Shown here: positions 11,205-62,408 of the stretch, piece by piece
Numbering within the stretch: the stretch's first letter is position 1
Layout of the letters: each line of letters opens with the position of its first letter
Source of the DNA: Trichosphaerium sp. ATCC 40318
Lineage: Eukaryota > Protista > Tubulinea
NCBI GenBank assembly: GCA_038496445.1
Contig: JALMLS010000311.1
Coordinates: forward strand, 1 to 64,000
DNA: 64,000 nucleotides
Direction: 5' to 3'
Notes under the pieces: model-generated
What the model saw: only the letters and a program-made list of their open reading frames with translations
Database searches by the model: none
Told to the model about the DNA's origin: nothing
Translations under genes and position numbers: made by a program

Positions 11205-13130
11205 TTAACTGAACCCGCCGAACATGTTTCCGCCTCCTTTGTTAGCACCATCCTTATTATCAGTACCACTAAAAGAAAAAGAACCATTCCTAGCAGAGAT
11301 ACGCTTTCCTCGTTTGCCCTTCTTTGGAGCATTCGTTGCAGTGTTACCAAACATATTACCTCCTGTACTTGCATCAGTTCCTCCAGAACCAAACGAGTTT
11401 CCAGTGCCACCAAAGCCACTACTTCCAGAGTTATTGCCACCAAAAGCACCTCCAGAAGTGCCACCAAATCCGCTACCACCAGTGGCGTTATTATTAGTTT
11501 GTCCGAAAGCGCCTGTTGCTCCTGTTCCGAACCCAGATGTGTTATCTTTTGATTGGCTACTTCCAAAGGCGTTGCTTCCTCCAAAGCCACTGGTACCCGA
11601 TGTACCTCCTCCAAATCCTGAAGTGCTACCGCCAGCTGCACTGTTACCGAAAGAAAACGCTTTCGGATCACCAGTGAAACCTGAACTACCAGTTGCACCA
11701 AACGTACTGTTGTTTCCTGAAGTAGAACCAAATCCAGAACTACTGTTAGCATTGGACTGACCGCTACCAAATCCGCTACCACCAGTTGCGTTATTATTAG
11801 ATTGTCCGAATCCGCCTGTTGCTCCTGTTCCAAACCCAGATGTGTTGTCTTTTGATTGGGTACCTCCAAAGGCGTTGCTTCCTCCAAAGCCTGAAGTGTC
11901 GGCGTTGGATTTGCTTGGTGTACCTCCAAACCCAGAGGTGCTACCACCAGCCTTGTTGTCGAATGAAAACGATTTTGTAGCACCGAAACCAGAGGAGGTG
12001 TTACCCGATGCGCCAAATGCGTTGTTTCCACCAAAACCGCTACTGCTTCCGTCGTCTTTCTTTGCACCGCCTCCAAATGCATTGTTTCCGCCAAAACCGC
12101 TAGTGTTAGTGTCCTCCTTCTTCACAGCACCACCAAATGCATTGTTTCCACCGAAACCATTATTGCTAGTGTCAGTCTTGTTTCCAAACCCAGAGGTATT
12201 TCCAAAGCCACCAGTACTGGCACCATCCTTCTTTGTGCTTCCTGTAGCACCAAATGCGTTATTTCCACCGAAACCGCTACTACTGGCACCATCTTTCTGT
12301 GTTGAATTACCGAACCCACTGCTGCCGTTTCCGAACCCAGAAGTACCTCCAAAGCCGCTAGTACTTGTATTCTCTTTCTTTACAGAGTCAAGACCTCCAT
12401 TGCCAGCATTAGAACCAAATCCAGAGCCGGTTGTGGAAGCACCATCAGCCTTATTATTTTGACCAAATGCGCCATTGCCTTGTCCGCCAAAACCACCAGT
12501 GGTTCCAGATTTACCGGTGACAAATTCAGTGCCACTACCGAAAGTACTAGTGTTGTTTGTAGTATCCTTCTTTCCACCAAATCCAGCATTATTACCGCTG
12601 CCGAAACCACCAGTACTTGTGCCTCCGTTTCCACCAAATCCAGCATTATTACTACCACCAAAACCACCGGTGGTTCCAGATTTACCGGCGACAAATTCAG
12701 TGCCACTACCGAAAGTGCTGGTGTTGTTTGTAGTATCCTTCTTTTCGCCAAACCCAGCTGTGTTTCCGCCGAAACCACCAGTGGTTCCAGATTGACCAGT
12801 GACAAATTCAGTACCACTACCAAAAGTGCTGGTGTTTTTCGTAGCATCCTTCTTTGCACCAAATCCAGCGGCGGTTCCACCAAACCCACCGGTATTACCG
12901 CCGAAACCACCAGTGGTTCCAGATTGACCAGCAACAAATTCAGTGCCACTGCCAAAAGTGCTGGTGTTGTTCGTAGCATCCTTCTTTGCACCAAATCCAG
13001 CGGCATTTCCGCCAAACCCACCGGTGGTTCCAGATTGCCCAACAACAAATTCAGTGCCACTACCGAAAGTGCTAGTACTTGTATCTTCCTTCTTACCGTC
13101 TGATTTCGACGTGGTATCAGTATTTGTGGT
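11205..13130 (-). repeat. Coding FG repeat array: about 5 x FGSGTEFVxGxSGTTGGFGG (12480-13080), multiple SGFGGNNAFG units, and a duplicated block (about 11465-11600 and 11765-11900)
   Basis: Recurrent acaaattcagtrccactrcc and ccaaatgcrttrtttccrcc strings on the plus strand. Confidence 0.9.
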
Positions 13131-15246
13131 AGCAGGAAACTAAAAGAAAACAAAAGTAAGTAAACTAAAAGATCAAGTAATACAAAAGAAGGTACCAGGG
13201 TTGGATTCTTTTTAATAGCGCTAGCTGCTGCTCCAAATACACCTCCTGTTTTTAGGTTTGCATCAAAGGACTAAGGAAGAGAAAGGTAAGCTTAAGAACG
13301 ACAACAAAAAGAGATGTTTCCAATTCGCAAAAAAAACCCACAAACGTACGGTTTCGCTATTTAGTTTTGGCTTGTCTTTACCGGTTGTAGGTGTGTTTGT
13401 TTGTGAACTTGCACCAAATCCTGTAATGTTTGTAGCCGCAGGAGATCCAAATCCAGGTGTTGAGGGCGATGTCTTTTGAATTTAAGGTGAGTTCTCAACA
13501 ACACTGAAGGATTTTTTTTGTTTTCGGAAAATTTTGATGTTGTAAAGATTTAAATAACAATGGCTCGGTTTGTAGCTTGTTTACGTACCGTATTGGTTGG
13601 TGGACTTGTCAAAGGTAATTGGAATCCCACCTTCTTCTTCTTACCACTCAATGCAGCCATTTCAGCACCTCTCTTGGCCATATGGTTTACTCTTTCTATT
13701 ACTTCTTCTTTTGTAAACACTGGAATAGGAGCCTAAAAGGAGTACTGGTAAGAACGGGTAAAATGAACATAAAAAAAAAATACACGACATTTTTGGTTTT
13801 TTTTGGTAGGCATTATCACGTGAATATAAAAAACAAGGATGAGTTTTGGGCTTCGGTTTTTTAAATCACGCACCCTCTTTTTGATAGGTGTAAGCATGAC
13901 ACCTGGATCAGGTGGCCTTATAGCACGTCTTGTAATTGGATCAATTTCAAGTTTAGGCATTGCCTTGAAAGGTGGCAAGTTATCTTCGTCTTCAATATCA
14001 TCATACTCATATATCGGTATTGGCTTCTTTCTTTTGGGTGTATTCTTTGTTGGAGAAGTTGAAGCTCTTCTTTTCTTTGTTTTTGTAGTAGACTTCTTTG
14101 GTTTCCTTGCAGAGGCAGATCCTTTCTTGGTAATAGTAGAACGACGCTTCTTCTTTTTCTGTTGTTGTCCTTCAGCTTCAGCTTCACGTTTCTTTTTCAA
14201 GCGTTGTGCTTGTCTCTTTTCTTGCAATTCTTGCTTTCGTATATTAGCTTCTCTTTCCAGTTGAGCTGCACGTTGCTGTTGCTTAAGTATACGAGGAGTC
14301 CCTGGATCAATATCAACAGCTGGAGGCAGAACGATTTGCGAGACTCTGTTAAACTTAGTCATCATTGTCTTTTGTCTCTTTTGGTTGCTTGTCATTGTTG
14401 TAGATTTTCTTCTCTTACGATCAATCGCCTTTTTTTTAACGGGTTTTGGAGTATTTGTTCTAGCTTTGGCTGCAGCGCTCGCTTTTCTTGATGCGCTCAT
14501 TGCCTTCTCGAAATATGACTGAGGGTTCGCTAATCTAATAGGGGATTGACCAAATTTACGCGATGGGCTGTAAGGTAACGGGCGAGGTTTTACTGCTGAG
14601 AAGCTTCGTTGCCGAAATCCTGGTGTTCTCCCTGATAGTGATGGTGAAGGATACGGTGATTGCGGTAGCGATGCAGACACTGGTGGAGGTGGCCCATGTA
14701 ACGGATAAGGGTAAGGGACATATTCCTCCTTTGGTGATGGGAGCGTCGTGTTCAAGTATGATGGTTGTGGGAGTACTTGGTGAGCAGGGTAGCGTTTGGG
14801 TGTTCTACAACAGTTGAGTTTTAGAAAAATTAATGAGTTTTACACGAAATTAAACCAAATGTACCGGCTTGGTGTCGAAAACGGGCTATTGAACGCGTCA
14901 GAACTGACACCGCTCCCATATGTTCTACTTGATCGTTTAGCAGCGCTTGGAGGTGACTTTCTTGTCTCTACTATCGGAAATACCGCTGAAAATCGTGAGA
15001 TAAGATACAACAAGTAGCGTTTTGTGTTTTTACCATTCTTTTTTTTGCGCGAAGGGCTTACTGGAGTAACGAGTGGAATTCTTTCGGCACTATAGGATAG
15101 TCGTTAAACAAAAATAATCAAAAAAAAAACAAAAAAAAAAAATAAAAACCAAAATGTTTGGCGCCAAACCTTATCCACACGTAGGCTATGTAAGCTGCTA
15201 TGGCCAAAGTCCATAGAATCATCGCCACAGCGGTTGACAGTTCCAT
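11205..15246 (-). CDS. FG-repeat nucleoporin with N-terminal transmembrane helix (POM121/Nup153-like architecture); multi-exon
   Basis: Exon 1 MELSTAVAMILWTLAIAAYIAYVWI is hydrophobic. It splices into a Ser/Pro-rich and K/R-rich region (ORF 13733-14755), then via short exons into an open frame from about 13139 to TAA 11205 with dozens of FG motifs. Confidence 0.8.
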
Positions 15247-18559: not shown

Positions 18560-20072
18560 TTATACACGGGCTTGCTCTTTCATTTTAAACATTATTTGTA
18601 ATGCTTGAATGATGAACCTATAAAAGTAGCAAACTTGATTAGAATGGGACAAGGAACACAGGTACTATAAATATACTAAAGCGTTACCTTGGCTTTGAAG
18701 CTGAACCTTTCCATGTAAATTTTTCCCATTCCCAATTGTAGTTTGGTTCGAGCTCTACCAACATTTGTGGCCAGAATCTTGAAAGCCTCCAGCATTGTAC
18801 AGTGTTTGAAAAAGCAGTCAATTGTCTGAATGAAACATGATACCTTAAAGAAAAAAAGTAAGTTCAACAAAAGCAAAAAAATTATTTGGTGATGGTAAAA
18901 AAAAGTTCATACCACATTTCTGGGCTTGTGAAACCAGCCTTCTTCCTTACAGCTCTAAGAAAAGTACGGAATAGTGTCCATTGGTCGAATTCAGCACGAG
19001 TGGATGTAAGTCCTTGCCAATGAAATCTTGTATTATCCCAAACATGGTTTTTGTAAACTGACTGTAATGCACGTTGTAGTGATCCTCCATACCTAAAAAC
19101 AAACCTTAAGAACCAACATACAATATCAATCCTTTGGAGCCTTTTTGTTTTTGTGGTTGAGCAAGTATTAGTACATTTCTATTATATAATCGCCACCAAC
19201 TTCCTTAAAGAAACTTTGTCTAATCCCATACCAATCATCCATTACTTTAACCCCAAGCTGTTCAGCACATGTATTGAATAATTGCCGTTGACGTGGTAAT
19301 GTCCAATAATTCTTTGGTGCATGTCTTTTGTACAAACACGTGTTAATCACGTGACTATTTTTTTTTTGTTTAAATAACAACGCACTGGAAGTTTGTTGGT
19401 GTCCATTTGAAGTCAGGGAATAAAGCCTCCAATGTCTTAGATAAAGAGTTTTTGTGACAACGCCTGATATGGTTGTAATTATGAGAATTATTGGGTGTCT
19501 TTTACAAAAGACTGAAGTGACGCACAATATACAACGACCTCCATAGGCAGTAATATCATTAACGCCAAAGTCGTACCAATCATCTAAGCTCTTGACACGA
19601 AGTTCTTTGGCTATTGTGTTCATTTTTATATGTTGAACATTTGGGTCTTCCCAGTGATGTACTGGTGCGTTTTTGCGCCTAGAAAAGGTATGGTTAATAC
19701 TTGCAATAAGGTACATAACATGAACTGTGCAGGCGCACATAAACTTCCATGACTCCCAGGAGTATTGAGGGTAAACATCAGCTAAACATTTGTAAAGTGA
19801 ACCGTCATAGAATTGTCTGCTCAAAACGCCTCATTTAGCGTTTATTTTGTTGTTATCATGTTTACTTGCCGTATAATGTACGATGTGTCACTTCCAAATG
19901 ATGTTGGATCAACTGTGTACCATTCTTCTAGATTTTTGAAGCCATTTGTCTTCTCAACAGCGTAGATGAGGTTTTTACGGTTACTTGGTATCGTCCAGTG
20001 GCTCCATGGGTTTCTTGTAGAAGTTTGGTGAAGTTTTTGTCCGTTATTACTCAAATACTTCAGTGTACTCAT
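18560..20072 (-). CDS. Trp-rich approximately 70-aa repeat protein (about 4 repeats, no catalytic domain seen); paralogue 1
   Basis: Repeats such as APKNYWTLPRQRQLFNTCAEQLGVKVMDDWYGIRQSFFKEVGGDYIIEMYGGSLQRALQSVYKNHVWDNTRF; multi-exon. Confidence 0.8.
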
Positions 20073-20352
20073 TTATAAGCGCTAATATAGCCATTACACG
20101 TTATGAATACATTTAACAGAGTAATAAATAGAGAAACGCACGTATTAACCATAAAGAAGCGTCTACGTTTCGTATAGAATGTGATCAAGTTATTCCACAG
20201 CCGGTTTAGAACGAAACAGACTTAAGCGCAAGAGAAGTTAAGTTTTTTGCCGTAAACCGCGTATTGGGCGTGTGAAACTACTTTAGTTATAATACGTGGA
20301 TTTATTAGTTGTGTTACAGCAGTTTTAACGTTTTTTTCATGTTCTGTTAAGG

Positions 20353-23300
20353 TCACGTGTGTGAATGAGATGATAGGGAGTTTCCTTTAGCTCTAAATAT
20401 TGTAGTCTTACTTTTACTATCTCCACTGCTCATACGCCCTCGTTTTTTGACTGCACGTCTTTGACTAGGTGGTCCTATTGCCTTTGCAAGGGTTTCAAGC
20501 TTATCACCAGCGTCAGAGTCGATAGTCTTTAGCTTAGGTAGCTTGTCATTTATAAAGCTGTGAAGGTATGCCAATGAAGATAAAATAATATCTTGTGGCA
20601 CTGTTAACCTCACTGTGATTCCAGGTGGTGCTGTGCCAGGAGGATTCTATTGTATTTAAAAGGATCAGTAAGGAGGTAAAAAAGCAAATAATGAATAAAA
20701 CGTACAGCAAGTTTATCTATAAAGTCTCTAAAGTCTGATTGGTTATCAAGAATAAAATCATTAATTTTCTCCATATATTCTTCTTTTATACCAGGTAAAG
20801 TCTCATTAGCGAGATTCTGTAGTGCCTTTGAAAGAAGTACGAAATACCGTTGAGACGTTTGACAAGGAAGTACTAGTAATCATGTCAAACAAGTAGAGGA
20901 CGCCAACTTTTGTTCGAATAAAAAAAAAAGTACAAGTACCTGGAAGCAATCCATATACTTGTGGTGTAGAAATCGCAGGACAAATGAACCTCAAGAATAT
21001 GAAGCCACCTACAGCTTTATAGTTTGTACGCTTCTCTGGGAACTTCTCACCGACTACTTCCATTACGTGGTGAGCCAAATGACGCATTTCACTAAACGAG
21101 GTTAGACCAGTAAAAAAACCTTATTGACTATTTTAAAGTCGTACAGGCGCATGTTTGGTAGTGACTCTTTGATACCCTTGAAGAGCTTCTGTGCTGTGAC
21201 AAGGAGGGTATAATTATTGATTGTAATATCTGCATCATCAACAAAGTCATGTTCAATGCGTTCTGGATCAATCTCAAGATCAAACTAACCAATCTTGATA
21301 AGAAAAAACCCGGAAGAAAGTTAGTGTATTGCTTTCGTACCCTAATAAGCTCTGTTCTATCGTTCTCTGCAACACCTTCCTCACCAATAGCAGTTGCATG
21401 AAGATCATAGATATATTCTGCAAACGTATGCCAGAGGTAAGGTATACCAATAATCTTTGCCCATACAGTAAACATCTTTGATGCAATACTCTCTGATCTA
21501 AATAATATAGAAGGATCACCTCTTGCTCTTTTAACTTCTTCATCAATAAACGTGAACAAAAGTTCTAGTACGCGACCCTATATAATGTTATTATCCAAGC
21601 ATAGAATGAAGCAACTTAAGTTGTGATGTACCTTGCTGTAGTACAAATAAACTAAAGCCTTTGCGAGTGTATCAGCATCATTAGATGAGTGTACTTGCTC
21701 TAGTAGTATAGGCAAGCTATAGCCTGGTTGATCCAACATAGCGTCTAGTGTTTGCAAGTAATTGGCTTGCTCTGCTGTCACATCATGCATTAGTCTTTGT
21801 GTTCCACCGAAAGCGAGAAGAGAATAATCAGGTTCTCTGAAAGCACGCCTTCTCTTTCTTCGTATAATGATGGCAATAATAATTGCCGCAATAAGTAGGA
21901 GTACAAGTACTGCGATTATAATGTAAGCCCAGAACGGGATAACAGTACGGTTATCGTCTGGTTGTTGTACTGCAAATGTTACACCACCTGCAGAAGATGC
22001 AAATAGTTTATCGTTCCACCACAAGGACAAAGCAACGCTAAAGTAAGTGGTTAGATAGTTAAGAGTAGAGGTATGGATGAGTGAATAACTTCTTAAGACA
22101 AACTCGTGCCTAGAGCTTGACGATACAGGTGGTACTATACACGTAAGTGCAGTGTCATTTACTATTACTGCAGGTACTCTACCAGAGCCAAAATCACATT
22201 CCATAACAGGTGCGGCTTGTCTTTTCCCACTTGCAATAAATGGCACGAATGTTGAAATAATATTCACCACAGTGCCTGGTCCACCAGATAGTGGCGCGAC
22301 GCCAATAACAGCTTTAATAAAAGTGTCAGTAAAATTAGCAAGCAATCAAGAGTGTTACCTGGGCATTCATCGACTTCTATTGTTGTTTCTGTGATGGGTG
22401 CTATAGGGCATCCTGATTGTGGTACACAAGTACTACTATACAAGCACCATTCACACGCCTTTCCTTTTGTGTTTTGTGCTAGGCACTCTCCACAACTGCT
22501 TGTACCTTCTGTACAATCTACAAAAGCGTGAGTTTCGGTTTGCAAACGTTTATAACGTACTATAGAAATTAAAGGGAAGTGCAACACCAATGTTGTTTAT
22601 CTCTTCGACATCTGGAAGCGTCAAACGTATGTTAACAGATACTTCAGTCTCAGAACTGCTAAGAGGTACATTACATGCCATAGATGTAGCTGTGACCGCA
22701 AAAGCCTACAAACAGGAATCAGGATGTCTTCATTTCGAAGAAAACTCTTAACAATTCTCACCTCTTCGCTTCTCACTGCTCCGTTCTGAAAAGTGTAATC
22801 ACACGTGTACACTTCGTTGCCGAAAGCCCGAAAGATGCCGTTTATGTTTGTTACACTCTGAGAGCTATTCGAAAATTCGGCCACGGTGGTGTGTGGTGGA
22901 ATGAGTGCTGATACAATTGGACAAGCTAACAGAATATTAATTTCTTCTTACAAAAATTTTGCGCACCTGTAAAGTCTGTTACTCTAAAAGTATCTGAACA
23001 CAAAGAGCTAGTGGCACATCCCCACAATTCAGAGTCAAGACAAAAATTACATACTCCTTCGCTACCACCAATACAAGCGCCACAGGAGGTTCCGTACGAA
23101 GAGCAGTCTGCAAGGAAGAAATTAATAATTAACTCAATCTTAAAACTCATACCAATTAATGTGAGTGCATCTACTTTACGATCGATTACGTTTTGTCCTT
23201 GTAACAGTGATATATCAACAGTCCGTTTATCTCTAATCTGAACTATATCTACTGTTGCGCCACTTGCCTGACAAGTCACTTGACGACTTGAACTTGTAGC

Positions 23301-26300
23301 CAGCTGTGCTGGTACAACAACTTCATCTATTTTGGAACGTCAGGAAAATTATTTCATAGGTTTTAACATTTACCTGTACTGAAGTGATAGATACATTCTA
23401 AGTTACCACTAGCATCAGATATCAACTCGTTTAGCTCTAACTCTAATACAGGTAAAAGAGCTTTATCTGATTGAAAGAATTCCACTGCCAACTTATTAGG
23501 CTGTACACTCTCAATTTCTAATCACATTGTTAAATAAAAGTATAGTTACGAGAAACAATACGTACCTGGGCAAGAAGAGTCAAAGCTGATAAACTCATCG
23601 CAAGTGTCGGTACTGTTTATACATCTTGGTGTATCAGAGAGGCATAGAGTACAACCTCCTACGGCAACACAAGAAGAACATGATGGTTCAGTAGGACATG
23701 CTTCATAAGATACACGGAATTCTAGAATAAAAAAAAAAGGATGAGTGTCTGTCAAACAGTGCAAAAAAAGAATTCTTGGACACTTACTGCTTGACAAGTC
23801 ACCAGATGTGGAGTTCAGAGTCAAAAATCCTGAAACTGTTTCAGTAACATTAACAAATCTTGGTGTTTCACAGATAGCTTGGACTGCATTTCCTGTAGTA
23901 GCTGTCACTTCATAGATCTCACTACCAGCTTCGAATACACAACTCTCCAAACCCTCAAAGTTGTGTGTGACTACTAGTGAATAACCTCCTTGTGGTGATA
24001 ATCTTGTCCGAGATAAAGATCTTATACCTGCAACAAGTAAGACACAAACACATCCAACAATATACGGACCGCAATTAGTCAATACAGTACTAAGACAAGT
24101 CCCAGTGTCACCATCTTCTCTTGCGAAACATAGAGAAGAATCAGAGCAATATCTACATTCTGTATACTCAAAGTCTGTGTCTTCTAAGCAGCTAGAACAT
24201 GCAGTAGATTGAGCGTTACATGTGTAGAATCGCAATTGCGAGTCATAGATACTCACTATGCCACCATTAGCCTTGACAGCAACATCAACATCTCGGAATC
24301 GAGTAATGGCAGCATCATTCTTTGCAAGACATTGTATTGTGTTGTTTCCAATGAATGTAGCATTAACAGGTTGTCCATCGATTACGCACTGTGAAGTAGA
24401 GTTAACGGAGTGCAAATGTTAGTGTTTTCTTACTTGGTAGTCTGTCCAGCTTTCGCTCACTTTATCCATCTGTATAGATATTGTAGCTCCCAAAAGGAAG
24501 GTGTAAACAGCAGGAGGAGTGATTGACAGTATACCTACATTGTTTTTAACTTAATTCTATTTGTTTTCAGCTCGTACTTGGACATGTTACATCAGTGAGT
24601 TCTGGCTTATCTGATTTATAGTGACACTTAGCATTGGCTTCATCGAACACTAGCACGTGGAAGTTAACTCATTGATAAAATGTAGGCATATCATTTAATA
24701 ACTTACCACAGATTGAATACGAACTACAACTTGAACACGATGTCAAAGAATCACAATCTGTAAAAAAAACCAAAGTAAGCTTCTTTAGTTAACACTATTA
24801 AGTCATTGATTACCGTATAGAGTAAAGTCTATGCCATTTGATACAAAGGGTGTGCCACCATAATTCACACTTAGGTTTATTTTTTCTGTAAGTATAATGT
24901 AAGTCATAAAACAAACTCGTTTGCTATATTTTTTTTTACAAATCAAATAAAACAAAAGCCTTTCAGTACCTTCTCCAGTTGGTAGTGATATATTTTCTCT
25001 GGTTACATTCCCCGCACACAATACTGTATTACCTTGCTGTGTACCTGGTAGTGATAATTTACTACCAAACTCACAGGTCAAAGGACCTCTACTTGGATCA
25101 AGTAAAGACAAGAAAACTAGATTATCGCCCAGCAACAAAACTGATAGTTGAGTGGATTCACTGATAGCTGCAGAAGAAGGAGATGCACTTTCTAAAGCAC
25201 CACAAGCAAATGAGTCCTAATATCAAATAAACAAAAAGAAGCAGTAGTAACCAAAAACTACTAGTACCTCTAAAAACGCTCCTTGTAGACTCTCACAAGT
25301 TCGTTTAGTTGAATCACTGTTTGTGATACAACTTAATGTTCTCGTACAGTACGCACAATCTGGTGCGTCTATTAAGCAGCTTGAGCAACTACCGTTTCCT
25401 CTGGTTGAACAATCATAGTAGTCAATGGTGATAGGATCAAAGAGTGGCGTTAAGCCGTATGATATTGTCAAAGTTCCAGGACCTGCCTCGGCTCGAAGTA
25501 GTGTCTCGCAAGTGACTACACGAGGATTCGAAAAATCAATGACAGCTGCGCTCAACTGGGAAGAACCTTCAAAACTACAAAGAAGTGATGCTTTTGTTGG
25601 ATCATTCCACAGAGGTGCTAGTTATTGTAAATAAATAGTAAACAGGGTATTAATACCTTTGGTGGTAATTATTATGGAAGTACCGCCGCCTATACTCGCA
25701 CTGATAGGTAAAGAAGCAGGTGTGACTAAGTAATGTGAGACAAGATTGGTACAACACAAAAACGCACAAGATACAGATTTAGACCAAAACATGTTGTCAC
25801 CACAATCAATTGCTGCTGTGCAACTTCCTGCTAGTTGTGAAGATCCACTCTGATTAATACACCAACCACTACGAAAATAGTGAGTATAAGGCGTGAATAA
25901 AAGGCGTACCAATATGCCTTGTCCTTAGACACACATTCTTCAGGTGTAGCAAATAGCCCACAATCTAAAAGGTTTCAGTTTTGCTTACAATTATTTCAAA
26001 AAAACCCAATAACTACCTGATAGCGATATGGACACTATGTTATCAGTTATTACATGAACAACATGTTTCGCCTTATTGAACAGAATACCATAACTACCTA
26101 TTGGTACATCAAGTCTCCAGACAGGCTCTCTTTTTGAAAAACAAAACATTAGAATTGATTTTTTGGCTTTATAATTCCTTACTTATCAAAGTCAAATCCA
26201 TCATATCTAAATACGGCGTTGACACTCTCATCACGAACAAACAACTGATCTGTTTCTTTATCATAAATAAACGGCGGGCCTCGATTCTCCAAGAGCGCTC

Positions 26301-27688
26301 TGTCAGAGAGAGATTCTACAGAAGATCGCTTGAAGTGGATACTTAGAATAAAAAATCACTCATGTAGAATAAGTTTGCACGTACACCTTCAAAACTGAGC
26401 GAGTCACTCACATTTCTACGTATTAAACCTCTTATAATAGGTGCATCAATTCTTACACGTTTTATGAATCCACCAACACCAGCAATAATATATTCATTGT
26501 TTGTTGATACCATGGCACCGGTTGGTACAAATGATGCTAGTTCAGACTCCAAGGTTACAATAGCTGTTGCATTATCATTTGTAGGATCATCAATTGTAGT
26601 ATCATAAATTGTGTAGACCTCATCAATTTGATCACAGTATGTAACAACTAAACAATAAAAAGTAAGCACGCCAAGACTTTTGCTAAGAAATGATTGGCAT
26701 GCGTACAAAAGTCTTCCATAAATGCTGTAGCGAAGGAACCCAGAAGCCTGCAACCACACCCAGCAGTGATTCTGTTATAAAGATCCTCAACCACCCAATC
26801 ATCCTCGCCCTACAAAATAACGTTATTTGTTTTTTAATTTTCATTTCATTTTTGTACCCATTTTATACGATACATATGCGAGCGATCACCAAATGTCAAG
26901 AAACGAACGTATAAGTAATCACCAAATTCCTTTGCATCGTCAATATTAAGTTAAATTTTCTTTCGATAAAAAAAAAAAAAAAAAAGCCTTTTGACAAATC
27001 TCTCGTTGTCATAACTAACCTGAGAGCCAATTATTTCAAAATTGGTGGGAATGCAAGTGGAGCTGTTTGTTGTATCGAAATCTTGACTGAATACTAATTC
27101 TGGCGTTATTGTACCTGTTGATCATCAAAACGTATTAGGTAAAGAAATGGCCAATTAATAAAAACGTTTACTTATTTCCTTCACGCGTGATATAGGTGTT
27201 GCTCTTATGTTTACTGTAATTGTTGGTGTTTCAATATTCTCAATCTCGTACTCGAACAAAAACTCGGTGTTTTCTACCATGCAACGTTAATTGCGCGTAC
27301 AATATTGCTTTGCGTACCTCCTTTAAAGGGTATTGACCCAATATGAAGTCCAAAGTACTTTGTTACGTTCGGTTGAGCTATGTAGAGTTAGATGAGGCGC
27401 TTGGCACAACTTGCTTGCTACACCTGTAAAAAAAAACGTACTAGTTCTAATTTCTTGCGCAACAAGCTCAGAAGATCTACAATCTGTGCACGCTCCCATA
27501 GTTATACGTCCATCCACCTTCATTTTAAATAGTTCACCAGTCGTAGCAATAGCGTATTCATCTATACCGTTGATACTTTTGAAAGCGAGGGTAGTAGAAG
27601 TTATGCTTGGCATAGGGGTGGTGTAAATTGCAATAATACCAACGACATACAGCGCGCCAATAACACACGCACGCCAGAAGACGCTCAT
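20353..27688 (-). CDS. Type I membrane receptor: signal peptide, beta-rich N-domain, about 7 alternating PSI-like and IPT/TIG-like modules, TM helix, cytoplasmic RasGAP (plexin-like)
   Basis: Signal MSVFWRACVIGALYVVGIIA; Cys modules such as CSSYGTSCGACIGGSEGVCNFC and CTEGTSSCGECLAQNTKGKACEWC; IPT-like PLSGGPGTVVNI...CDFG...LTCIVPP; TM WAYIIIAVLVLLLIAAIIIAIII-RRKRRR; RasGAP motifs LFRSESIASK and GGFIFLRFICPAISTP. Confidence 0.85.

Positions 27689-57205: not shown

Positions 57206-62408
<5,203 letters not shown>

What the first reader, a model, noticed from the sequence alone, without database searches (positions are those of the whole stretch)
20353..27688. Plexin-like receptor (propeller?-[PSI-IPT]x~7-TM-RasGAP) in a protist
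Seen: signal peptide; about 450-aa beta-rich N-domain ending VSISLS-DCGLFATPEECVSKDKAY-x-GWC, which resembles the Sema-PSI junction; about seven alternating Cys-rich and IPT-like units; one TM; and a RasGAP with arginine finger (LFRS) and FLRFICPAI signature, with no inserted Rho-binding domain. Established: plexins are Sema-PSI-IPT-TM receptors with a split GAP, described from animals and choanoflagellates. Inference: either a pre-holozoan ancestor of plexins with an unsplit GAP or a convergent receptor-GAP, meaning ligand-controlled Ras/Rap inactivation at the cell surface.
Basis: partly seen in the sequence, partly recalled or inferred. Interest (0 to 1): 0.8.

Follow-up and report, generated by a model that had tools for sequence, protein, structure and literature searches.

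The report
Protist surface receptor with built-in RasGAP
This protist gene encodes a single-pass surface receptor with a plexin-like stalk outside and an ordinary, intact Ras-inactivating enzyme inside; it belongs to a protist receptor family I found no description of and is not a true plexin, which matters because it couples a receptor directly to a Ras switch outside animals.

Summary
A 33-exon gene on the minus strand (27688 to 20353, introns 39-84 nt) encodes about 1884 residues. In order it has a signal peptide, an orphan beta-rich head (26-408), seven alternating PSI-IPT units, one TM helix and a complete unsplit RasGAP. R1582, FLRFICPAI and K..QNLAN are all intact.

IPT7, the TM helix and the first 77 cytoplasmic residues lie in one exon, so ectodomain and GAP are physically linked.

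About 25 relatives share the layout. They come from two transcriptomes and from intron-poor environmental eukaryote contigs. The window protein scores 413.6 bits against their cytoplasmic profile.

No Sema signal was found in the head exons or in ten full-length relatives. The head's fold could not be tested, because the joined model may not be sent to the fold or search tools.

Verdict: a receptor-RasGAP built from shared PSI-IPT modules, by convergence or domain shuffling with plexins, not a plexin ancestor. The scan already noted this receptor kind elsewhere in this genome (s1-400883, s1-397133).

The parts
20353..27688 (-). Whole gene: 33 exons, about 1884 codons plus stop, introns of 39-84 nt, mostly with GTA donors
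   Evidence: Codon-score and splice dynamic programming, then hand curation. The cytoplasmic part is validated end to end by the family profile.
27614..27688 (-). Start codon and signal-peptide-like hydrophobic N-terminus (residues 1-25)
   Evidence: Translation. It is the first ATG after an in-frame stop.
26018..27613 (-). Orphan beta-rich head domain (residues 26-408; 9 exons). Exon borders here are the least certain part of the model.
   Evidence: No match to Pfam, PDB, the heads of relatives or metagenome contigs. Composition.
25415..26017 (-). PSI-IPT unit 1 (residues 409-551)
   Evidence: Seven-unit alignment; collinear stalk alignment with relatives.
24815..25414 (-). PSI-IPT unit 2 (552-706)
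   Evidence: PSI_integrin 0.015; TIG_plexin 0.23.
24224..24814 (-). PSI-IPT unit 3 (707-836). Its PSI lacks the fourth Cys of CxWC.
   Evidence: 2.7e-9 to IPT-rich proteins; TIG 0.0027.
23702..24223 (-). PSI-IPT unit 4 (837-974)
23154..23701 (-). PSI-IPT unit 5 (975-1125)
22562..23153 (-). PSI-IPT unit 6 (1126-1275)
21947..22561 (-). PSI-IPT unit 7 (1276-1450)
   Evidence: PSI 6.7e-4; TIG 0.0043; 8e-21 to IPT-rich proteins.
21632..22311 (-). Exon 28 of the 33 in the final model (exon 27 of the draft table). This single exon carries IPT7, the TM helix and the first 77 cytoplasmic residues, so it is the physical link between ectodomain and GAP.
   Evidence: Stop-free translation. It was the query that found the family.
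21863..21922 (-). Transmembrane helix (1459-1478), followed by RRKRRR
21767..21862 (-). Family-specific juxtamembrane segment (1479-1510) with the conserved PDY motif
   Evidence: Profile positions 1-33 are matched only by family members.
20440..21766 (-). RasGAP domain (about 1511-1856; 5 exons plus the end of the bridging exon)
   Evidence: 413.6 bits to family profile A1. One exon alone reaches PF00616 at 44.7 bits, above the 28.3 cut-off. That exon matches NF1 and p120GAP at 4e-5.
21497..21499 (-). Arginine-finger codon (R1582 in ILFRSES)
   Evidence: the column is invariant in the family (F102/R103 of A1).
20971..20997 (-). FLRFICPAI motif (secondary arginine R1715)
   Evidence: invariant F, L, R and P in A1.
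20805..20828 (-). KALQNLAN motif (catalytic-site lysine region)
   Evidence: invariant K, Q, A and N in A1.
20356..20439 (-). Basic, Ser-rich C-terminal tail, followed by the stop codon TGA at 20353-20355

Best explanation
The gene encodes a type I single-pass receptor. An orphan, fast-evolving head sits on a long rod of seven PSI-IPT units. After one TM helix and only about 30 linker residues comes a complete, catalytically intact, canonical RasGAP domain.

It belongs to a protist family with the layout head-(PSI-IPT)x7-TM-RasGAP, whose heads differ between members.

Most likely mechanism (inferred, not shown):
- The head binds something outside the cell, such as a surface, prey, a partner cell or a soluble cue.
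- Binding clusters or re-orients the receptor.
- The membrane-apposed GAP then switches off lipid-anchored Ras, or a Ras-like GTPase such as Rap, at that spot.
- This locally damps actin protrusion or cup formation.

It works like a plexin (receptor directly coupled to a GAP), but it is not a plexin. The GAP is an ordinary unsplit RasGAP, and nothing marks the head as Sema.
For: Shown:
- The gene model gives an open 1884-codon frame with uniform short GT-AG introns.
- One exon carries IPT7, the TM helix and the juxtamembrane segment.
- The joined model matches the 399-position family cytoplasmic profile from position 2 to 391 at 413.6 bits. Non-family RasGAPs score 211 bits or less.
- Relatives of 1600-2040 aa carry PSI, TIG and a full-length PF00616 in one uninterrupted ORF on intron-poor eukaryote contigs.
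- Two relatives are Trinity transcripts. P0062 is a complete ORF from head to GAP; P0001 spans PSI7 to GAP.
- The Arg finger, FLR and K..Q.LAN are invariant across 21 members and present here.
- The family profile hits NF1 at 1.1e-53, p120GAP at 1.4e-47, SynGAP at 2.9e-44 and IQGAP at 7e-21, with no plexin at E<=10.
- The AF2 model of the closest relative's cytoplasmic domain (pLDDT 83.6) is nearest to p120GAP, NF1 and SynGAP by Foldseek.
- In a quick ML tree the family forms its own group (SH-aLRT 97), apart from the NF1/IRA and SynGAP groups.
- Heads are unrelated between subgroups.

Inferred from established knowledge: RasGAPs such as NF1 shape Ras patches, macropinocytosis and phagocytosis in Dictyostelium (PMC4374526).
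Against: - No RNA run was listed for this genome, so splice sites, above all in the head, rest on prediction.
- The head's fold is unknown, so a Sema-like propeller is not excluded.
- The Arg-finger exon scores slightly better on Plexin_cytopl (2.8e-4) than on RasGAP (1.5e-3).
- Nothing was measured about ligand control, the substrate GTPase or GAP activity.
- I could not confirm the organism's lineage.
Confidence: 0.8

Rival explanations
1. It is a true stem plexin. The head would be a diverged Sema propeller, the stalk would be homologous to the plexin stalk, and the plexin GAP would descend from this kind of unsplit GAP by later insertion of the RBD.
For: - Same order of parts as in plexins, and PSI plus TIG_plexin hits in relatives.
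- Plexin cytoplasmic domains align structurally over more residues than p120GAP does, 338-351 against 313, at a nearly equal Z.
- The Arg-finger motif R-S-E-S-I-A-x-K-M resembles that of plexin A3.
Against: - No Sema or Plexin_cytopl hit in ten full-length relatives or in the window's exons.
- Sequence identity is 24-26% to p120GAP and NF1, but 10-14% to plexins.
- The family profile finds no plexin at E<=10.
- The stalk is seven strict PSI-IPT pairs, not three pairs followed by three IPT domains.
- Heads are interchangeable within the family.
- The head is 383 aa, shorter than a Sema domain, which by my own knowledge is about 450-500 aa.
Confidence: 0.08
2. It is a constitutively active, membrane-tethered RasGAP. 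The ectodomain would serve adhesion or positioning, holding the GAP at contact sites, rather than gating it by ligand.
For: - The GAP sits only about 30 residues from the membrane, and no autoinhibitory module is visible.
- IPT-rich rods are common in adhesion-type proteins retrieved with the same exon.
Against: - The variable heads on a conserved stalk look like recognition modules.
- The juxtamembrane segment, with an invariant Pro and a conserved PDY, is conserved as if it had a regulatory role.
- No test distinguishes this reading from ligand gating.
Confidence: 0.1
3. It is a gene-model artefact: an ectodomain gene and a RasGAP gene lying head to tail and wrongly joined.
For: There is no RNA evidence for this locus. 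The model is ab initio plus homology.
Against: - IPT7, the TM helix and 77 cytoplasmic residues share one stop-free exon.
- The family profile runs without a break across the next intron.
- More than 20 relatives have the fusion in single ORFs or single transcripts.
Confidence: 0.02

Closest known systems
Plexins (animals and choanoflagellates; PMC6374515, PMC8011033)
   Different: The stalk is seven strict PSI-IPT pairs instead of Sema-(PSI-IPT)x3-IPTx3. The GAP is a canonical PF00616 domain with no RBD insert and only 10-14% identity to plexins. No Sema or Plexin_cytopl signal was found. The head is orphan and varies within the family.
Canonical cytosolic RasGAPs: neurofibromin GRD, p120GAP, SynGAP
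   Different: Those proteins are soluble and reach the membrane through C2, PH, SH2 or Sec14 modules. Here the GAP is welded to a TM receptor through a family-specific 30-residue linker. The family is a separate group in the quick tree.
Receptor-RasGAP genes noted elsewhere in this genome by this scan (s1-400883, s1-397133, s1-390923, s1-411333, s1-372822)
   Same: The same TM plus intact-RasGAP logic. s1-400883 also reports a PSI/IPT ectodomain.
   Different: According to those notes (not checked here), other copies carry beta-solenoid or adhesin-like ectodomains. This copy has an orphan 383-residue head on a seven-unit PSI-IPT rod.
MET/RON receptors and Met-like plexin-ectodomain kinases (PMC6374515)
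   Same: A PSI-IPT stalk under a head domain, and a single TM helix.
   Different: Their output domain is a tyrosine kinase, not a GAP, and their head is a Sema domain.

Membership tests
Plexin | N-terminal Sema domain (PF01403, seven-bladed propeller) | tested here: inconclusive
No Sema hit in any head exon at E<=1, nor in ten full-length relatives. Head exons find nothing in PDB.
Plexin | PSI and IPT modules between the head and the TM helix | tested here: met
   Seven PSI-IPT units. PSI 6.7e-4 and TIG about 3e-3 on single exons. Strong PSI, TIG and TIG_plexin hits in collinear relatives. The number and order differ from plexins.
Plexin | Plexin-type cytoplasmic domain (PF08337): a GAP split by a Rho-GTPase-binding domain | tested here: not met
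   Relatives hit PF00616 over positions 2-207 of 207 and do not hit PF08337. The two arginines are 133 residues apart. The family profile finds no plexin at E<=10. One exon gives a sub-threshold PF08337 hit of 20.3 bits against a cut-off of 25.
Canonical RasGAP (PF00616) | Arginine finger (FRxxS), FLR..PA and K..Q.LAN catalytic motifs | tested here: met
   ILFRSES, FLRFICPAI and KALQNLAN are present, in columns that are invariant across the family.
Canonical RasGAP (PF00616) | Match to the family model above the curated cut-off | tested here: met
   One exon alone scores 44.7 bits against a cut-off of 28.3. It matches the NF1 and p120GAP chains at 4e-5.
Unnamed protist head-(PSI-IPT)x7-TM-RasGAP receptor family | Family-specific juxtamembrane segment plus GAP profile (alignment A1) | tested here: met
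   413.6 bits over profile positions 2-391 of 399. Other RasGAPs score 211 bits or less and lack positions 1-33. In the quick tree the window protein is sister to P0001 (support 99), inside the family group (support 97).
Unnamed protist head-(PSI-IPT)x7-TM-RasGAP receptor family | Collinear stalk of about 1000 residues | tested here: met
   The stalk alone aligns with P0062 at 2e-36 (query 11-992), with P0002 at 8e-30 and with P0048 at 1e-28.
Neurofibromin/IRA | GRD embedded in a protein of about 2500-3000 aa, followed by a Sec14-PH (CRAL-TRIO) module | tested here: not met
   Nothing follows the GAP here except a 28-residue tail. The NF1/IRA sequences form a separate group in the tree.

The most novel reading that the evidence does not exclude
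Receptors of the form (PSI-IPT)n-TM-RasGAP existed in protists before Holozoa and are the chassis from which plexins were built. On this reading a Sema head replaced the variable head, and an RBD was inserted into a GAP that then diverged fast. My data do not exclude it. The GAP folds are equally close, the stalk modules are shared, and the plexin GAP is too diverged to be placed by sequence.
Probability: 0.12. Interest if true: 0.85.

Novelty: new variant of a known kind. Interest (0 to 1): 0.6.

Why it matters
As far as I know, plexins are usually presented as the only receptors with a GAP domain of their own, and as an invention of the choanoflagellate-animal lineage (PMC6374515, PMC8011033).

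This gene and about 25 relatives show that a surface receptor welded directly to a Ras-family GAP also exists in protists. They use the same PSI and IPT building blocks, but with an ordinary RasGAP. I found no paper describing such a family in four full-text searches; that is not proof that none exists.

There are two ways it could matter.
- It gives a concrete candidate for how plexin-type signalling could be assembled by domain shuffling.
- It offers a testable route by which amoeboid cells could switch off Ras patches, and so protrusion and cup formation, exactly where their surface touches something.

Tried and rejected
- **RNA support.** The look-up of sequencing runs listed no RNA run, so read laying was never used.
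- **The window's own protein in the databases.** The exon carrying IPT7 and the TM helix, searched against 1.84 billion representatives, found at best 38% identity. This genome's proteins are therefore not on record.
- **Head homologues.** All of the following drew blanks:
  - local phmmer with filters off and hhalign against the heads of relatives;
  - a self-comparison looking for repeats;
  - the ESM Atlas feature search on the largest head exon;
  - two metagenome scans with head exons;
  - PDB phmmer on three head exons.
- **Folding a relative's head.** P0057:22-375 with 7 sequences gave pLDDT 49.8 and only generic propeller matches at TM about 0.3. I discard this as evidence. That head is also not alignable to the window's head.
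- **Lineage.** An SDR exon of the window found only unnamed hits. The AP-4 beta adaptin next to relatives on L002 has no named relative above 31% identity.
- **Rejected splice calls.** My first models contained false introns inside PSI2 (25317-25352) and IPT6 (22786-22854). They also read through the stop at 20353 into the next gene.
Full report
**Gene model.**
The region holds no long ORF. It holds a chain of short stop-free segments on the minus strand, separated by 40-70 nt gaps that begin GT(A) and end AG.

I trained a codon score on the window, ran a splice-aware dynamic programme and curated the result by hand against the repeating PSI and IPT pattern. The final model has 33 exons running from 27688 to 20353. 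It has introns of 39-84 nt and encodes 1884 codons before TGA.

Two errors of the automatic model were corrected:
- false introns inside PSI2 and IPT6;
- a read-through of the stop into the next gene.

The borders of head exons 2-6, and a possible 66-nt in-frame intron inside IPT7, remain uncertain.

The joined protein was used only in my own scripts.

**Anatomy.**
| Residues | Part | Basis |
|---|---|---|
| 1-25 | hydrophobic signal-like start | |
| 26-408 | head | |
| 409-1450 | seven units, each a Cys-rich PSI-like module followed by an IPT-like module | |
| 1459-1478 | TM helix, followed by RRKRRR | |
| 1479-1856 | juxtamembrane segment and RasGAP domain (R1582 in ILFRSES, FLRFICPAI, KALQNLAN) | |
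| 1857-1884 | short basic tail | |

- The seven units align with one another. They share the pattern C..C...C.(W/Y/F)C...CP, a central Cys and a closing aromatic.
- Single exons give weak but consistent Pfam hits: RasGAP at 1.8e-11 (above the curated cut-off), PSI at 6.7e-4, TIG at 0.003-0.004 and TIG_plexin at 0.23.
- The two catalytic arginines are 133 residues apart, which leaves no room for a Rho-binding domain.

**One protein or two.**
No RNA run was listed. Three other lines of evidence link the ectodomain to the GAP:
- A single stop-free exon (21632-22311) carries IPT7, the TM helix and the first 77 cytoplasmic residues.
- The profile of relatives runs unbroken across the next 54-nt intron.
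- Relatives carry the whole architecture in single ORFs on intron-poor contigs and in Trinity transcripts.

**The family.**
Searching that bridging exon against 1.84 billion representatives gave no self hit. It did find proteins of 1600-1900 aa that match across IPT, TM helix and juxtamembrane segment.

- Pfam finds PSI, TIG, TIG_plexin and a full-length PF00616 in ten of them. It finds neither Sema nor Plexin_cytopl.
- A word search with the cytoplasmic part of P0002 added more members. Beyond the family it found NF1/IRA at about 1e-18 and SynGAP at about 1e-14, and no plexin at E<=1e-3.
- The members sit on eukaryote contigs that also carry an adaptin, a mitochondrial carrier and ubiquitin genes. 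They often occur as head-to-head paralogue pairs next to a PAP2 gene.
- My joined model aligns collinearly with them from PSI1 to the C-terminus. It scores 413.6 bits on the 21-member cytoplasmic profile A1, against 211 bits or less for any other RasGAP.

**What kind of GAP.**
- Profile A1 against all PDB sequences gave NF1-GRD 1.1e-53, p120GAP 1.4e-47, SynGAP 2.9e-44 and IQGAP 7e-21. No plexin appeared at E<=10.
- The FLR exon alone hits NF1 and p120GAP at 4e-5. The Arg-finger exon hits plexin A3 (0.06) and NF1 (0.2) at noise level.
- An AF2 model of the closest relative's cytoplasmic domain (P0001:215-613, pLDDT 83.6) is nearest to p120GAP, NF1 and SynGAP by Foldseek, at 22-28% identity. Plexins appear only from rank 26, at 9-13% identity.
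- A quick ML tree puts the receptor GAPs in one group (SH-aLRT 97), with the window protein sister to P0001 (99). That group is separate from the NF1/IRA and SynGAP groups.
- The careful tree search did not finish, and no plexin sequence could be fetched to include.

**The head.**
The 383-residue head has no detectable relative. It matches:
- none of the family's heads;
- nothing in Pfam, searched exon by exon;
- nothing in PDB;
- nothing in the ESM Atlas feature search;
- nothing in JGI metagenome contigs.

It shows no internal repeat by BLAST.

The heads of relatives fall into at least two mutually unrelated groups plus singletons. The head is therefore the variable part of a conserved chassis.

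A low-confidence model of one relative's head is all-beta and matches only generic propellers at TM about 0.3. I do not count this as evidence.

Each of the seven PSI modules starts the same way after the last strand of the preceding IPT.

By eye the head holds six or seven stretches of the type 'D..g.lYv....i.r', as in many propeller blades. That is inference only.

**Lineage.**
I could not confirm the organism. Earlier notes of this scan call it amoeba-like; I did not test that. An SDR exon gave only unnamed hits.

The relatives' contigs have 51-56% GC and few introns. The AP-4 beta adaptin on L002, next to two of the relatives, has no named relative above 31% identity. They therefore come from an unsampled eukaryote lineage, different from the 38% GC, intron-rich genome of the window.

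**Literature.**
Plexins and semaphorins are reported from animals and choanoflagellates, and not from Creolimax or Capsaspora. [quoted passage not shown]

Four full-text searches found no description of a transmembrane RasGAP with a PSI-IPT ectodomain. That is a statement about this library only.

The scan itself has already noted receptor-RasGAPs elsewhere in this genome (s1-400883, s1-397133 and others).

**Mechanism.**
- Shown: the architecture, the intact catalytic motifs, the membrane-proximal placement of the GAP, the conserved juxtamembrane segment, and the variable head on a conserved stalk.
- Inferred: engagement of the head clusters or re-orients the receptor, and this brings GAP activity onto lipid-anchored Ras or Rap at the contact site, switching off protrusive signalling there. 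This is by analogy with dimerisation-activated plexins and with the role of NF1 in Dictyostelium cups (PMC4374526).
- Unknown: whether the GAP is gated or merely positioned, and which GTPase it acts on.

**Left out.**
- Any search or fold of the joined spliced protein.
- Read mapping, because no run was listed.
- A tree including plexins.

Noticed in passing
window 19033-20343, minus strand: Directly downstream lies what looks like a separate multi-exon gene. Several of its exons are about 33 codons long and repeat a W..DP / DDW(Y) motif. My splice programme wrongly fused it to the receptor by skipping the stop. It has no Pfam hit.
   Followed up: partly
L001 3428-8617 and 10001-15526; L002 3264-8537 and 10001-15295; L004 1-2085 and 3001-9129: In the intron-poor relatives, the receptor-RasGAP genes sit as head-to-head pairs of diverged paralogues. 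A PAP2 phosphatase gene lies next to the pair in L001, L002 and L003, which suggests an old, conserved tandem arrangement.
   Followed up: no
window 11208-13139, minus strand: A 644-codon stop-free stretch rich in GGFGG / FG repeats and Thr/Ser, which looks like an FG-nucleoporin-type low-complexity protein. It has no Pfam hit.
   Followed up: no
window 57751-61875, minus strand: Segments that look like a Diaphanous-type formin: a GBD/FH3-like stretch at 61525-61875, and a Gly/Pro-rich stretch around 59271-59681 seen on the other strand. This is read from translations only.
   Followed up: no
window 21970-22100, minus strand (inside IPT7): A 22-residue segment (LRSYSLIHTSTLNYLTTYFS) interrupts the IPT7 pattern. 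It could be an in-frame 66-nt intron with an unusual GTTTGT donor, or a loop insertion. This is unresolved without RNA.
   Followed up: partly
family alignment A1, positions 146-182 of P0001:215-613: Family members carry a variable, low-confidence loop of about 10-35 extra residues between the Arg-finger helix and the conserved E-V-D-P motif. I could not check whether this is the site where plexins carry their RBD.
   Followed up: no
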